Source: Ranitomeya imitator (taxonomy: Eukaryota). From it: a DNA stretch of 64,000 nucleotides. The notes under the pieces are model-generated. The model saw nothing but the letters and a program-made list of their open reading frames with translations, made no database searches and was not told where the DNA came from. The translations under genes and the position numbers were made by a program. The stretch is taken from positions 22,754,001-22,818,000 of the forward strand of contig NC_091289.1 of NCBI RefSeq assembly GCF_032444005.1, given 5' to 3'. Below are positions 13,456-21,392 of this stretch, piece after piece. Each line of letters begins with the position of its first letter. The first letter of the stretch is position 1.

Positions 13456-14036
13456 TCAATACTTGGTCAGGAATCCTTTGGCAGAAATGACTGCTTCAAT
13501 GCGGCGTGGCATGGAGGCAATCAGCCTGTGACACTGCTGAGATGTTATGGAGGCCCAGGATGCTTCAATAGCGGCCTTAAGCTCATCCAGAGTGTTGGGT
13601 CTTGCGTCTCTCAACTTTCTCTTCACAATATCCCACAGATTCTCTATGGGGTTCAGGTCAGGAGAGTTGGCAGGCCAATTGAGCACAGTAATACCATGGT
13701 CAGTAAACCATTTACCAGTGGTTTTGGCACTGTGAGCAGGTGCCAGGTCGTGCTGAAAAATGAAATCTTCATCTCCATAAAGCATTTCAGCCGATGGAAG
13801 CATGAAGTGCTCCAAAATCTCCTGATAGCTAGCTGCATTGACCCTGCCCTTGATGAAACACAGTGGACCAACACCAGCAGCTGACATGGCACCCCACACC
13901 ATCACTGACTGTGGGTACTTGACACTGGACTTCAGGCATTTTGGCATTTCCTTCTCCCCAGTCTTCCTCCAGACTCTGGCACCTTGATTTCCGAATGACA
14001 TGCAAAATTTGCTTTCATCAGAAAAAAGTACTTGGG
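13456..14036 (-). pseudogene. Tc1 transposase catalytic part (DD34E)
   Basis: SQVLFSDESKF...FQHDLAPAH...WPANSPDLNPIENLW...AKGFLTKY*. 34 residues between the second D and the E. Confidence 0.95.
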
Positions 14037-16563
14037 GTACAAAATTCTCATTGGGGTCTGTTACAAACCCCCAAATATAACAGAAACCATGGAAAGTCTA
14101 CTTCTAAAGCAGATAGATGAAGCTGCAACCCATAATGAGGTCCTGGTTATGGGGGACTTTAACTACCCGGATATTAACTGGGAAACAGAAACCTGTGAAA
14201 CCCATAAAGGCAACAGGTTTCTGCTAATAACCAAGAAAAATTATCTTTCACAATTGGTGCAGAATCCAACCAGAGGAGCAGCACTTTTAGACCTAATACT
14301 ATCTAATAGACCTGACAGAATAACAAATCTGCAGGTGGTTGGGCATTTAGGAAATAGCGACCACAATATTGTGCAGTTTCACCTGTCTTTCACTAGGGGG
14401 ACTTGTCAGGGAGTCACAAAAACATTGAACTTTAGGAAGGCAAAGTTTGAACAGCTTAGAGATGCCCTTAATCTGGTAGACTGGGACAATATCCTCAGAA
14501 ATGAGAATACAGATAATAAATGGGAAATGTTTAAGAACATCCTAAATAGGCAGTGTAAGCGGTTTATACCTTGTGGGAATAAAAGGACTAGAAATAGGAA
14601 AAACCCAATGTGGCTAAACAAAGAAGTAAGGCAGGCAATTAACAGTAAAAAGAAAGCATTTGCACTACTAAAGCAGGATGGCACCACTGAAGCTCTAAAA
14701 AACTATAGGGAGAAAAATACTTTATCTAAAAAACTAATTAAAGCTGCCAAAAAGGAAACAGAGAAGCACATTGCTAAGGAGAGTAAAACTAATCCCAAAC
14801 TGTTCTTCAACTATATCAATAGTAAAAGAATAAAAACTGAAAATGTAGGCCCCTTAAAAAATAGTGAGGAAAGAATGGTTGTAGATGACGAGGAAAAAGC
14901 TAACATATTAAACACCTTCTTCTCCACGGTATTCACGGTGGAAAATGAAATGCTAGGTGAAATCCCAAGAAACAATGAAAACCCTATATTAAGAGTCACC
15001 AATCTAACCCAAGAAGAGGTGCGAAACCGGCTAAATAAGATTAAAATAGATAAATCTCCGGGTCCGGATGGCATACACCCACGAGTACTAAGAGAACTAA
15101 GTAATGTAATAGATAAACCATTATTTCTTATTTTTAGTGACTCTATAGCGACAGGGTCTGTTCCGCAGGACTGGCGCATAGCAAATGTGGTGCCAATATT
15201 GAAAAAGGGCTCTAAAAGTGAACCTGGAAATTATAGGCCAGTAAGTCTAACCTCTATTGTTGGTAAAATATTTGAAGGGTTTCTGAGGGATGTTATTCTG
15301 GATTATCTCAATGAGAATAACTGTTTAACTCCATATCAGCATGGGTTTATGAGAAATCGCTCCTGTCAAACCAATCTAATCAGTTTTTATGAAGAGGTAA
15401 GCTATAGACTGGACCACGGTGAGTCATTGGACGTGGTATATCTCGATTTTTCCAAAGCGTTTGATACCGTGCCGCACAAGAGGTTGGTACACAAAATGAG
15501 AATGCTTGGTCTGGGGGAAAATGTGTGTAAATGGGTTAGTAACTGGCTTAGTGATAGAAAGCAGAGGGTGGTTATAAATGGTATAGTCTCTAACTGGGTC
15601 GCTGTGACCAGTGGGGTACCGCAGGGGTCAGTATTGGGACCTGTTCTCTTCAACATATTCATTAATGATCTGGTAGAAGGTTTACACAGTAAAATATCGA
15701 TATTTGCAGATGATACAAAACTATGTAAAGCAGTTAATACAAGAGAAGATAGTATTCTGCTACAGATGGATCTGGATAAGTTGGAAACTTGGGCTGAAAG
15801 GTGGCAGATGAGGTTTAACAATGATAAATGTAAGGTTATACACATGGGAAGAGGGAATCAATATCACCATTACACACTGAACGGGAAACCACTGGGTAAA
15901 TCTGACAGGGAGAAGGACTTGGGGATCCTAGTTAATGATAAACTTACCTGGAGCAGCCAGTGCCAGGCAGCAGCTGCCAAGGCAAACAGGATCATGGGGT
16001 GCATTAAAAGAGGTCTGGATACACATGATGAGAGCATTATACTGCCTCTGTACAAATCCCTAGTTAGACCGCACATGGAGTACTGTGTCCAGTTTTGGGC
16101 ACCGGTGCTCAGGAAGGATATAATGGAACTAGAGAGAGTACAAAGGAGGGCAACAAAATTAATAAAGGGGATGGGAGAACTACAATACCCAGATAGATTA
16201 GCGAAATTAGGATTATTTAGTCTAGAAAAAAGACGACTGAGGGGCGATCTAATAACCATGTATAAGTATATAAGGGGACAATACAAATATCTCGCTGAGG
16301 ATCTGTTTATACCAAGGAAGGTGACGGGCACAAGGGGGCATTCTTTGCGTCTGGAGGAGAGAAGGTTTTTCCACCAACATAGAAGAGGATTCTTTACTGT
16401 TAGGGCAGTGAGAATCTGGAATTGCTTGCCTGAGGAGGTGGTGATGGCGAACTCAGTCGAGGGGGTTCAAGAGAGGCCTGGATGTCTTCCTGGAGCAGAA
16501 CAATATTGTATCATACAATTATTAGGTTCTGTAGAAGGACGTAGATCTGGGGATTTATTATGA
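14037..16563 (+). pseudogene. CR1 ORF2: C-terminal half of APE endonuclease plus reverse transcriptase
   Basis: VMGDFN, LDLILSN, SDHN (APE). NYRPVSLTS, YLDFSKAFD, GVPQGSVLGP, IFADDTKL (RT). An extra G at ~16460-16465 shifts the last ~20 codons. Confidence 0.93.
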
Positions 16564-19986: not shown

Positions 19987-20042
19987 ATAACTCCGGGGTG
20001 GTGGAAAAAAAATGTTCACCTTCCAGAATGGTCTCATGTCAA

Positions 20043-20086
20043 TTTGCAGACATGTGTTTTGGGGTGTTGCCTCTCCTCAGTACAAA
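20043..20086 (-). ncRNA. Second, degenerate type I hammerhead motif (G12 to A)
   Basis: Reverse complement TTTGTA-CTGAGGA-GAGGCAACACCCC-AAAA-CACAT-GTC-TGCAAA. Confidence 0.65.
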
Positions 20087-20263
20087 GCAGGAGATTTGAT
20101 TTGGATGTATGAGAGATCTCTAACTGGGATAACATTTCTCCATATGGAGAGTGACCTGTCAGGACGGCAAGAGCATGTCAATCATGTCACTCTCCATAAA
20201 GAGAAATGTTGCCCATTAGACCTCAGTCAGAGGCCTCTCATACAGCCAATTCAAATCTCCTGC

Positions 20264-20307
20264 TTTGCACTGATGAGGGGCAACACCATGAAACACGTGT
20301 CTGCAAA
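20264..20307 (+). ncRNA. Type I hammerhead ribozyme motif (stem II partly mutated)
   Basis: TTTGCA-CTGATGA-GGGGCAACACCAT-GAAA-CACGT-GTC-TGCAAA: 6-bp stem I, intact core, palindromic stem III (ACACGTGT), GUC cleavage triplet ending at 20301. Confidence 0.8.
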
Positions 20308-20655
20308 TTGAGATTCTGGTTTGACTTTTATCCTAAATCATGTGGCAAGTCTCAATAAAGGGTCAATATTAACTTTTGGGATTGCTACTTCCAATAGGTG
20401 ACACTAGAGTTCAAGTCCTCTTCTCAGAAGAGACAATTTTCATATTTAATTTCCCGTGGCTTATGAGCCTCCTTAGTCATTTCACTTTTCATAAGGAGAA
20501 ACGTTACCCTTTAGACGCCCGAATTACATTGATTTTAATGGACACTGTGTAGTACTTAGTATCTCCTGCGGAGGTGCTGCTGGTGAATTGAGCACTTACT
20601 ACCAGATTTCCCAAAAATTTACAGATGATCACTGGAGATTAAGGGACTTTTCTAA

Positions 20656-21392
20656 AGGCCCCTTCACATTAAGCGACGCTGCAGCGATACCGACAACGAT
20701 CCGGATCGCTGCAGCGTCGCTGTTTGGTCGCTGGAGAGCTGTCACACAGACAGCTCTCCAGCGACCAACGATGCCGGTAACCAGGGTAAACATCGGGTAA
20801 CTAAGCGCAGGGCCGCGCTTAGTAACCCGATGTTTACCCTGGTTACCATCCTAAAAGTAAAAAAAACAAACACTACATACTTACCTAACGCTGTCTGTCC
20901 TCCAGCGCTGTGCTTCTCTGCACTCCTCCTGTACTGGCTGTGAGCACAGCGGTCGGAAAGCAGAGCGGTGACGTCACCGCTCTGCTTTCCGGCTGACCGA
21001 CGCTCACAGCCAGTACAGGAGGAGTGCAGAGCACAGCGCTGGAGGACAGACAGCGTTAGGTAAGTATGTAGTGTTTGCTTTTTTTACTTTTAGGATGGTA
21101 ACCAGGGTAAACATCGGGTTACTAAGCGCGACCCTGCGCTTAGTTACCCGATGTTTACCCTGGTTACCAGTGAAGACATCGCTGGATCGGTGTCACACAC
21201 GCCGATCCAGCGATGTCCGCGGGAGATCCAGCGACGAAATAAAGTTCTGGACTTTCTTCAGCGACCAACGATCTCCCAGCAGGGGCCTGATCGTTGGTCG
21301 CTGTCACACATAACGATTTTATTAACGATATCGTTGCTACGTCACAAAAAGCAACGATATCGTTAACAATATCGTTATGTGTGAAGGTACCT
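20656..21392. mobile_element. Highly palindromic MITE (AGG...CCT termini; T2/Kolobok- or Harbinger-like)
   Basis: TIRs AGGCCCCTTCACA / TGTGAAGGTACCT flanked by TAA on both sides. Two internal ~72-bp hairpins. Related copy at 40380-40922. Confidence 0.85.

What the first reader, a model, noticed from the sequence alone, without database searches (positions are those of the whole stretch)
20030..20512. Two head-to-head type I hammerhead ribozymes in a ~295-bp retrozyme-like monomer
Seen: a plus-strand motif (20264-20307) with 6-bp stem I, CUGAUGA and GAAA core, palindromic stem III and GUC site. It lies in a monomer whose ends overlap at period 295. An inverted partial copy carries a second motif (20043-20086, minus). 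The lesions are complementary and include CpG-decay-type changes (CCCCG to CCATG; CGAAA to CAAAA), so the inferred ancestor GGGG-CAACA-CCCC-GAAA is canonical. Known: minimal type I hammerheads with palindromic stem III occur in Penelope-like elements and in short tandem non-LTR retrozymes of amphibians (e.g. newt satellite 2), and cleave as dimers to give monomeric or circular RNAs. Inference: this is a dispersed self-cleaving retroelement family here, probably not in repeat libraries as such. The inverted arrangement would fold into long dsRNA.
Basis: partly seen in the sequence, partly recalled or inferred. Interest (0 to 1): 0.8.

Follow-up and report, generated by a model that had tools for sequence, protein, structure and literature searches.

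The report
Decayed frog hammerhead retrozyme insertion
This is an old, mutated insertion of a small non-coding jumping element (a "retrozyme") that carries self-cutting hammerhead RNA motifs and is pasted in head-to-head as Penelope-like retrotransposons do. The kind is already described in amphibians, so this is a real but ordinary example.

Summary

Neither window motif is an intact ribozyme. The plus copy has a broken stem II. The minus copy has G12 changed to A and a weakened stem II. Both fail a strict type I descriptor, and no Rfam hammerhead model matches.

They are relics of a large family in this 5.96-Gb genome:
- The 27-base core pattern occurs 1,552 times exactly and 16,835 times with up to 3 mismatches; the reversed-pattern control gives 0.
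- The unit is 313-316 nt and non-coding. The window's 295 comes from deletions in the linker.
- The majority sequence is a canonical type I hammerhead with a 22-bp interrupted stem I and a weak palindromic helix III, the dimer-type seen in amphibians.

Family insertions show the signature of Penelope-like elements: variable 5' truncation, partial tandems, an adjacent inverted copy, two fixed 3' ends about 91 nt apart, and single 9-13-bp target-site duplications.

Two young/old subfamilies differ only at unconstrained hammerhead positions. I found no covariation and no RNA evidence. Non-LTR retrozymes are published for all seven amphibians sampled in one survey, and this scan has already reported this family elsewhere in the genome. 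Verdict: new member of a known kind, low interest.

The parts
20020..20160 (-). Inverted arm: a partial retrozyme unit. In family coordinates, where q1 is the first base after the cleavage site, it runs from about q194 (inner end) through q316/q1 to about q13-20 (outer end). It lacks a canonical 3' terminus.
   Evidence: BLAST to the 316-nt family unit and to the window monomer. Inverted repeat pairs I1 and I3. 82.7% identical to the older-subfamily majority.
20043..20086 (-). Hammerhead relic on the minus strand. G12 of GAAA is mutated to A, stem II reads GAGG/CCCC, helix III reads CACAUG, and stem I has a G.U pair.
   Evidence: Sequence. Alignment to 49 family copies. Fails the strict descriptor.
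20161..20164 (.). Approximate head-to-head junction between the two arms. The inner ends are about q194 and q178.
   Evidence: Pairwise alignment of the arms and comparison with the family linker. The exact limits are uncertain by about 10 nt.
20165..20519 (+). Direct arm of about 1.14 units: q178-316, q1-149, a shortened linker, then q197 to about q240. It ends at the family's second canonical 3' terminus (site B).
   Evidence: BLAST, linker comparison, list of site B junctions. 91.7% identical to the older-subfamily majority.
20244..20269 (+). 5' strand of the extended stem I. It is partly decayed here.
   Evidence: Circular fold of the intact unit. Alignment A1 and pair counts.
20264..20307 (+). 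Hammerhead relic on the plus strand. The core CUGAUGA...GAAA and the GUC site are intact. Stem II is reduced to 2 G-C pairs plus a G.U pair and a G.A mismatch (CCCC changed to CCAU).
   Evidence: Sequence and alignment. Fails the strict descriptor. Cofolding of two copies gives the double-hammerhead pairing, -22.9 against 2 x -7.3 kcal/mol.
20301..20302 (+). Predicted self-cleavage site (GUC|U) of the plus-strand motif; this defines q316|q1.
   Evidence: Position in the hammerhead consensus (established knowledge). Some family insertions have 5' ends exactly at the homologous site.
20302..20325 (+). 3' strand of the extended stem I.
20440..20476 (+). Linker between units, shortened by deletions compared with other family copies. 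This is why the local period is 295 rather than 313-316.
   Evidence: Alignment with older-subfamily copies that keep the full linker. Tandem period 313 in L006 and 316 in L031.
20477..20519 (+). Start of a second unit (partial tandem), repeating 20182-20224.
   Evidence: Direct repeat D2 with spacing 295. BLAST q197-227.

Best explanation
Window 20020-20519 is an old, neutrally decaying insertion of a non-coding, non-LTR retrozyme family with a 313-316-nt unit. It consists of an inverted partial copy joined head-to-head to a direct copy of about 1.14 units.

Inferred life cycle of the family:
1. Tandem copies are transcribed.
2. The type I hammerheads have a 22-bp interrupted stem I and a very weak palindromic helix III. 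They pair two-by-two as double hammerheads and cut after GUC.
3. The resulting monomers, or uncut or re-ligated multimers and circles, are copied by the reverse transcriptase of autonomous Penelope-like elements.
4. The GIY-YIG endonuclease of those elements opens both target strands, so both 3' ends can prime cDNA.

This would produce what is seen in the family: variable 5' truncation, more than one unit per insertion, an adjacent inverted copy, a roughly 90-nt 'tail' on one side only, and a 9-13-bp target-site duplication.

Shown here: the motifs, the family and its size, and the insertion anatomy. Inferred: cleavage, circularisation and the identity of the mobilising enzyme. The two motifs in the window are mutated and almost certainly inactive. 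If this locus were transcribed, it would fold into a roughly 130-bp imperfect hairpin rather than into hammerheads.
For: Motifs and repeats are at the stated coordinates.

Family size and unit:
- At least 6,179 first-look candidates for the monomer; the scored copies are 82-86% identical.
- 1,552 exact and 16,835 near-exact core motifs against 0 controls.
- Tandem period is 313 and 316 nt, with arrays of about 4 units in L046 and L065.
- No coding capacity: at most 80 stop-free codons in tandem form.

Hammerhead:
- The majority sequence of both subfamilies has the full core, three helices and a GUC site.
- 16 of 50 aligned copies pass a strict type I descriptor, with 0 hits in 30 shuffled windows.
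- The subfamilies differ at 0 of 38 constrained hammerhead positions, at 4 of 7 free positions (N7, loop 2, helix III loop; Fisher p = 2e-4) and at 30 of 271 other positions (p = 0.035).
- Cofolding gives the double-hammerhead pairing.

Insertion anatomy, from 98 arms:
- 3' ends cluster at q141-150 (39 arms) and q231-240 (17 arms).
- 5' ends are scattered.
- In all 9 clean head-to-head composites, one arm ends at each of the two sites. Chance is about 4e-4 by my arithmetic.
- Single target-site duplications of 9-13 bp flank 8 composites.
- True 5' ends at the cleavage site occur in L045, in both arms of L056, and in L050.

Autonomous partners are available: at least 3,742 GIY-YIG candidates, with open frames up to 930 aa.

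Literature:
- Amphibian retrozymes with dimer-acting hammerheads (PMC7229834).
- Retrozymes in all 7 amphibians sampled, mean unit 316 bp, derived from PLE pseudo-LTRs (10.64898/2026.07.22.740005).
- PLE insertions with partial tandems, an inverted 5'-truncated copy and a one-sided tail (PMC8557442).
- A PLE enzyme that cleaves and extends both strands and initiates internally (PMC11167929).
Against: - No Rfam hammerhead model matches the window or ten family loci, even at permissive E-values.
- There is no covariation beyond shuffles: 4 pairs with double changes against 3.7 expected.
- No RNA evidence was obtained. The runs that hold the sequence are contigs of unknown library type, and no RNA-Seq run was listed.
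- No target-site duplication was found for the window insertion, and the outer end of its inverted arm is not at a canonical terminus.
- The inverted arm is more diverged than the direct arm: 17% against 8% from the subfamily majority, chi-square about 7.3 by my arithmetic. Two separate events at this locus are therefore not excluded.
- No sequence similarity was found between the retrozyme and the 3' regions of 12 sampled Penelope-like copies. The specific autonomous partner is unidentified.
Confidence: 0.87

Rival explanations
1. The element is not a separate non-autonomous family. It is a solo or fragmentary pseudo-LTR of an autonomous Penelope-like element, whose pseudo-LTRs normally carry hammerheads.
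For: Penelope-like elements are abundant here. The insertion architecture is that of such elements. Published work places Xenopus retrozymes next to pseudo-LTRs in trees (10.64898/2026.07.22.740005).
Against: - Units repeat head-to-tail every 313-316 nt with no ORF between them.
- The 3' regions of 12 GIY-YIG loci share no sequence with it.
- None of the first 100 exact motif sites on contig C1 lies within 5 kb of a listed GIY-YIG match (coordinates, compared by eye).
Confidence: 0.06
2. The head-to-head arrangement in the window comes from two independent insertions, a younger direct copy landing beside or inside an older inverted copy. It is not one dual-primed event.
For: The inverted arm is 17% diverged from the subfamily majority and the direct arm 8%. 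No target-site duplication brackets the pair, and the outer end of the inverted arm is non-canonical.
Against: - Head-to-head pairs bracketed by one target-site duplication recur at many loci of the family.
- Both arms belong to the same older (CAACA loop) subfamily.
- The arms are short, so the divergence estimates are noisy.
Confidence: 0.2
3. It is a foldback or MITE-type DNA transposon, or a hairpin RNA gene (miRNA- or siRNA-like), and the hammerhead resemblance is incidental.
For: A long, stable hairpin is predicted: -179 kcal/mol, z = -17.9. There are weak sub-threshold Rfam miRNA-precursor hits on the hairpin.
Against: - Most family copies are not palindromic, and the inner junctions differ from locus to locus.
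- The ends behave like retrotransposition products, with fixed 3' ends and variable 5' ends.
- The Rfam hits score 25-29 bits against gathering scores of 70-80.
- The hammerhead core is complete in 1,552 copies.
Confidence: 0.03
4. It is a classical satellite DNA, like newt satellite 2, spread by recombination or segmental duplication rather than by retrotransposition.
For: Tandem organisation with hammerheads, as in the originally described newt satellite (PMC7229834).
Against: - Copies are dispersed on all ten large contigs, mostly as 0.6-4 units.
- They show 5' truncation and locus-specific 9-13-bp target-site duplications.
Confidence: 0.03

Closest known systems
Non-LTR retrozymes of amphibians: axolotl Rtz331/Rtz353 and newt satellite 2 (Cervera and de la Pena 2020, PMC7229834); vertebrate survey by Li, Clavereau and Pollet 2026 (bioRxiv 10.64898/2026.07.22.740005)
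   Same: - Non-coding tandem units of about 300-350 nt; the survey's amphibian mean is 316 bp.
- One type I hammerhead per unit, with a very short helix III capped by a palindromic loop. This implies action as a dimer.
- Thousands of copies per genome.
- Co-occurrence with Penelope-like elements.
   Different: - No sequence comparison with the published families was possible, because the papers' text carries no sequences.
- Expression, cleavage and circular RNA are shown for axolotl but not here.
- The window copy is a decayed inverted-plus-direct insertion, not an active tandem.
Penelope-like elements and their pseudo-LTR hammerheads (PMC4209133, PMC8557442, PMC11167929)
   Same: - Insertion architecture: 5' truncation, partial tandems, an adjacent inverted copy, an extension ('tail') on one side only, and target-site duplication.
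- A minimal type I hammerhead.
   Different: - There is no RT/GIY-YIG ORF in or next to the unit.
- The extra stretch between the two alternative 3' ends is about 91 nt, against the published 30-40 bp.
- No sequence similarity to 12 sampled local Penelope-like 3' regions.
Plant LTR retrozymes (PMC4918200)
   Same: Non-autonomous retroelements whose hammerheads release monomers that circularise.
   Different: - Plant elements have type III hammerheads inside true LTRs, with a primer-binding site and a polypurine tract.
- They are 600-1000 nt long and are mobilised by Ty3/gypsy machinery.
- None of these features is present here.
Rfam Hammerhead_1 (RF00163) and the intronic HH9/HH10 type I hammerheads
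   Same: Type I topology and the same catalytic core.
   Different: No Rfam model reaches even E = 10 on the window or on intact copies. My inference is that the cause is the missing stable helix III hairpin.

Membership tests
Hammerhead ribozyme, type I (family majority sequence) | Conserved core C3-U4-G5-A6-N7-G8-A9, G12-A13-A14, the A15.1-U16.1 pair, and a cleavage site with H17 (not G) | tested here: met
   The majority of both subfamilies reads CUGA(N)GA ... GAAA ... GUC. There are 1,552 exact core matches genome-wide.
Hammerhead ribozyme, type I (family majority sequence) | Three helices around the core, with helix I open-ended | tested here: met
   - Helix I has 6 bp next to the core and extends to about 22 bp.
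- Helix II has 4 G-C pairs and a 5-nt loop.
- Helix III is only 2 bp as a hairpin, or 8 bp in a dimer.
- 91% of cells are paired across 50 copies, against 26-48% when the partners are slid.
- 16 of 50 copies pass a strict descriptor.
Hammerhead ribozyme, type I (family majority sequence) | Covariation supporting the helices | tested here: not met
   4 pairs show changes on both sides, against 3.7 in shuffles. The only systematic difference is U.G against C-G at one stem I pair. This is expected for neutrally decaying copies of one or two masters, so it is uninformative rather than contrary.
Hammerhead ribozyme, type I (family majority sequence) | Match to the curated Rfam covariance models | tested here: not met
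   There is no hammerhead hit at gathering threshold or at E up to 10, on the window or on intact copies. This is a detection threshold, not a biochemical criterion.
Hammerhead ribozyme, type I (family majority sequence) | Self-cleavage | not testable with these tools
   The only indirect hint is that 4 arms in 3 loci have 5' ends exactly at the predicted cleavage site, where about 0.3 is expected.
Hammerhead ribozyme (the two window copies themselves) | Intact core and helix II | tested here: not met
   The plus copy has helix II reduced to 2 bp plus a G.U pair and a G.A mismatch. The minus copy has G12 changed to A and a helix II mismatch. Both fail the descriptor. They are relics.
Non-LTR retrozyme (metazoan) | Non-coding head-to-tail repeat units, each with a type I hammerhead | tested here: met
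   Arrays have periods of 313 and 316 nt. L031 has two complete hammerheads 316 nt apart. There is no ORF. In the window there are only 1.14 units.
Non-LTR retrozyme (metazoan) | Dispersed copies with retrotransposition hallmarks (target-site duplication, 5' truncation) | tested here: met
   Not met for the window copy itself, where no duplication was found.
Non-LTR retrozyme (metazoan) | Co-occurrence with autonomous Penelope-like elements | tested here: met
   At least 3,742 GIY-YIG candidates; 148 were scored over the Pfam cut-off, with open frames up to 930 aa.
Non-LTR retrozyme (metazoan) | Expression as linear and circular monomer RNAs | tested here: inconclusive
   Holder runs are contigs of unknown library type. 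No RNA-Seq run was listed. Contigs cannot show ends or circles.
Penelope-like element pseudo-LTR | Flanks an RT plus GIY-YIG ORF of the same element | tested here: not met
   The nearest ORF in the window (14032-16563) is a LINE with an AP-endonuclease and RT. The retrozyme shows no similarity to 12 Penelope-like 3' regions. The sample is small.

The most novel reading that the evidence does not exclude
The family may preserve a genome-wide record of how Penelope-like reverse transcriptase works on a ribozyme RNA.
- In head-to-head insertions, one arm always ends at one initiation site (q141-150) and the other arm at a second site about 91 nt downstream (q231-240). This suggests that each target strand uses its own initiation site on the template.
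- A subset of cDNAs stops exactly at the hammerhead cleavage site. That would be in vivo evidence that the ribozyme cuts.
If the young subfamily (about 95% identical copies, 1,552 perfect cores) is still active and makes circular RNA, this frog would be a natural system for studying that mechanism.
Probability: 0.3. Interest if true: 0.4.

Novelty: new member of a known kind. Interest (0 to 1): 0.2.

Why it matters
On its own it matters little. It confirms that a frog genome carries a large hammerhead-bearing retrozyme family of the kind already documented in salamanders and Xenopus, and that this window holds a dead copy.

It is useful in three ways:
- For annotation: these elements escape the Rfam hammerhead models, and their inverted and tandem structure confuses repeat finders.
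- The family-level regularities could serve mechanistic work on Penelope-like retrotransposition. These are the two fixed 3' ends used one per arm, the single target-site duplications, and the occasional 5' ends at the cleavage site.
- Palindromic relics like this one are potential sources of double-stranded RNA if transcribed.

Tried and rejected
- Rfam scans at gathering and permissive thresholds on the window, on ten family loci and on a 91-nt intact motif gave no hammerhead hit. They gave only weak miRNA/snoRNA look-alikes caused by the hairpin.
- The covariation test on 50 copies was no better than shuffles.
- RNA evidence: two run searches and one read-laying run produced only contigs of unknown library type. 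'Goes back 285/315' joints merely reflect tandem DNA. Nothing can be said about transcription, ends or circles.
- A search for a target-site duplication around the window insertion found nothing longer than 5 bp.
- A search for the missing outer part of the inverted arm elsewhere in the window found nothing.
- Autonomous partner: 12 GIY-YIG loci showed no similarity to the unit or its termini. A hammerhead-like string in three of them has four extra bases between the core and helix II, so I did not accept it.
- Several apparent 5' ends at q1 turned out, on inspection, to extend 6-12 nt into the hammerhead. Only 4 arms in 3 loci are true cleavage-site ends.
- The cluster of 5' ends at q191-200 in the older loci is probably an artefact of my query start and of linker divergence.
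- The 99-codon ORF at 20012-20311 is a by-product of the palindrome, and the 843-aa ORF at 14032-16563 is an unrelated LINE.

Full report
**What is in the window**

- On the plus strand, 20264-20307 reads UUUGCA / CUGAUGA / GGGG-CAACA-CCAU / GAAA / CACGUG / UC / UGCAAA.
- On the minus strand, 20043-20086 reads UUUGUA / CUGAGGA / GAGG-CAACA-CCCC / AAAA / CACAUG / UC / UGCAAA.

The repeat finder gives inverted arms 20036-20126 / 20224-20314 (91 nt, 86% complementary) and 20131-20158 / 20183-20210 (89%). Together these make an almost continuous palindrome. It also gives a direct repeat with spacing 295 (20182 and 20477). As RNA, 20030-20320 folds into one imperfect hairpin of -179 kcal/mol, with z = -17.9 against shuffles. 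That fold would also sequester both motifs.

**State of the two motifs**

Neither is an intact ribozyme.
- The plus copy keeps the core and the GUC site. Its helix II is reduced to two G-C pairs plus a G.U pair and a G.A mismatch.
- The minus copy has G12 changed to A and a mismatch in helix II.
- CUGAGGA is not a lesion, because position 7 of the core is free (established knowledge of the hammerhead consensus).

A strict type I descriptor that I wrote rejects both window copies and finds nothing in 30 shuffled windows. It accepts 16 of 50 aligned family copies as a positive control. No Rfam hammerhead model matches the window, ten family loci or a 91-nt intact motif, even at E up to 10. The only hits are far-sub-threshold miRNA look-alikes caused by the hairpin.

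**The family**

The 295-nt monomer finds at least 6,179 first-look candidates in the window's own 5.96-Gb genome. Sixty were scored, on all ten large contigs, and they are 82-86% identical to the window copy.

The 27-base core pattern CTGANGA-GGGG-CANNA-CCCC-GAAACAC occurs 1,552 times exactly and 16,835 times with up to three mismatches. The reversed control gives 0.

An alignment of 42 copies shows two subfamilies:
- an older one with loop CAACA, helix III CACGUG and N7 mostly G; the window belongs to it;
- a younger one with loop CAGUA, CACAGUG and N7 mostly C or U.

CpG decay is real: 3 of 4 and 2 of 2 ancestral CpG sites now read TG or CA in the two arms.

Measured from cleavage site to cleavage site, the unit is 316 nt in L031 and 313 nt in the L006 array. 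The window's 295 is due to deletions in the linker at 20440-20476.

The unit has no coding capacity. As a circle it folds to -98.7 kcal/mol (z = -3.8). Stem I extends to about 22 bp, interrupted by an internal loop and a bulge. Helix III can form only 2 bp as a hairpin but 8 bp between two copies. Cofolding of two window plus-strand motifs gives exactly the double-hammerhead pairing.

**Evidence for constraint**

Across 50 copies, 91% of cells in the proposed pairs are paired, against 26-48% when the partners are slid. There is no covariation beyond shuffles.

The informative comparison is between the subfamily majorities:
- 0 of 38 constrained hammerhead positions differ;
- 4 of 7 free positions differ (Fisher p = 2e-4);
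- 30 of 271 other positions differ (p = 0.035).

So the master lineage kept the ribozyme while the rest of the unit drifted.

**How the copies were inserted**

I mapped 98 arms in 63 loci onto the 316-nt unit.
- 3' ends cluster at two sites: q141-150 (39 arms, ending ...GAGACAATTTGCAT) and q231-240 (17 arms, ending ...GATACTTCTTGGAT).
- 5' ends are scattered.
- Many arms exceed one unit and run straight through the cleavage site.
- Head-to-head pairs are common. In all nine clean cases one arm ends at the first site and the other arm at the second. By my arithmetic, chance is about 0.42^9 = 4e-4.
- Eight such pairs are bracketed by a single 9-13-bp target-site duplication, so each pair is one event.
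- Four arms in three loci (L045, both arms of L056, L050) begin exactly at the predicted cleavage site, where about 0.3 would be expected. Other apparent cases proved on inspection to start 6-12 nt upstream.

This anatomy matches published descriptions of Penelope-like elements. These describe 5' truncation, partial tandems, an adjacent inverted 5'-truncated copy, and a tail at one end only (PMC8557442). They also describe an enzyme that cleaves and extends both target strands and initiates reverse transcription internally (PMC11167929).

The genome holds at least 3,742 GIY-YIG candidates, with open frames up to 930 aa. I found no sequence similarity between the unit and 12 sampled Penelope-like 3' regions. 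The specific partner is therefore unknown.

**The window copy in that frame**

With q1 at 20302:
- The direct arm runs from about q178 through one full unit to about q240. It ends at the second canonical terminus.
- The inverted arm runs from about q194 to only q13-20. It lacks a canonical terminus.
- No target-site duplication is detectable.
- The direct arm is 91.7% identical to the older majority and the inverted arm 82.7%. Chi-square is about 7.3 by my arithmetic.

I favour one Penelope-style event followed by decay and loss of the outer part of the inverted arm, because that pattern recurs in the family. Two successive insertions at this spot are not excluded.

**Comparison with what is known**

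Non-LTR retrozymes with dimer-acting type I hammerheads are established in salamanders (PMC7229834). A 2026 preprint reports them in all seven amphibians sampled, with a mean unit of 316 bp, and derives them from Penelope pseudo-LTRs (10.64898/2026.07.22.740005). Its text names no poison frog.

Earlier notes of this scan report the same 314-316-nt family at several other places of this genome. They call the genome a poison frog, which I did not verify. They reached the same verdict. My reading was formed before I saw them.

**RNA evidence**

None was obtained. The listed holder runs are contigs of unknown library type from several coded organisms, and no RNA-Seq run was listed. The joints seen only mirror tandem DNA.

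**Verdict**

The window holds a dead relic of a real, large retrozyme family. It is a new member of a known kind and of low interest in itself. The family-level insertion regularities are worth a note.

Noticed in passing
Family loci L021, L037, L039, L041, L048, L056, L061, L063, L064 (arm coordinates): In head-to-head insertions of the retrozyme family, one arm always ends at q141-150 and the other at q231-240, about 91 nt further on. There are no same-site pairs in nine clean cases. This looks like the one-sided 'tail' of Penelope-like elements, but it is about 90 nt long rather than the published 30-40 bp.
   Followed up: partly
L045:1257-1810, L056:1347-2046, L050:1577-1697: Some insertions or arms begin exactly at the predicted hammerhead cleavage site (q1). 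In L056 both arms meet there. This is consistent with cDNA run-off on self-cleaved RNA.
   Followed up: partly
L045 and L063 (site B flanks): Two different loci share nearly the same flank and target sequence (ACATCAGTATTTG) next to the retrozyme end. They may be paralogous copies of one insertion, or a repeated preferred target.
   Followed up: no
L062:799-1181 and L062:7162-7746: Two complex retrozyme blocks are mirror images of each other, about 6 kb apart. This may be a large inverted duplication or a bigger composite element.
   Followed up: no
window 14032-16563 (+): An 843-aa open frame carries AP-endonuclease and reverse-transcriptase domains (Pfam Exo_endo_phos_2 and RVT_1). It is a LINE copy unrelated to the finding.
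   Followed up: partly
window 20672-20847 and 20880-21065: Just downstream of the retrozyme there are several near-perfect nested palindromes, for example 20776-20808 / 20815-20847 at 97% and 20724-20743 / 20749-20768 at 100%. There is also a palindrome of about 185 bp. They look like other foldback or MITE-type repeats.
   Followed up: no
L070 (minus strand, offset 2078), L072 (minus strand, offset 1990), L077 (plus strand, offset 2026); offsets as printed: About 0.5 kb from the GIY-YIG match of three Penelope-like copies lies a conserved string, CUGAGGA-CUAA-GAACAC...GUGUUC-GAAAC-GCG-UUC. It resembles a hammerhead but has four extra bases between the core and helix II. I did not accept it as a hammerhead.
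   Followed up: partly
Runs X1-X24: 31-mers of the young unit are held by runs labelled with at least six different coded organisms. The family, or close relatives of it, is therefore shared by several related species.
   Followed up: no
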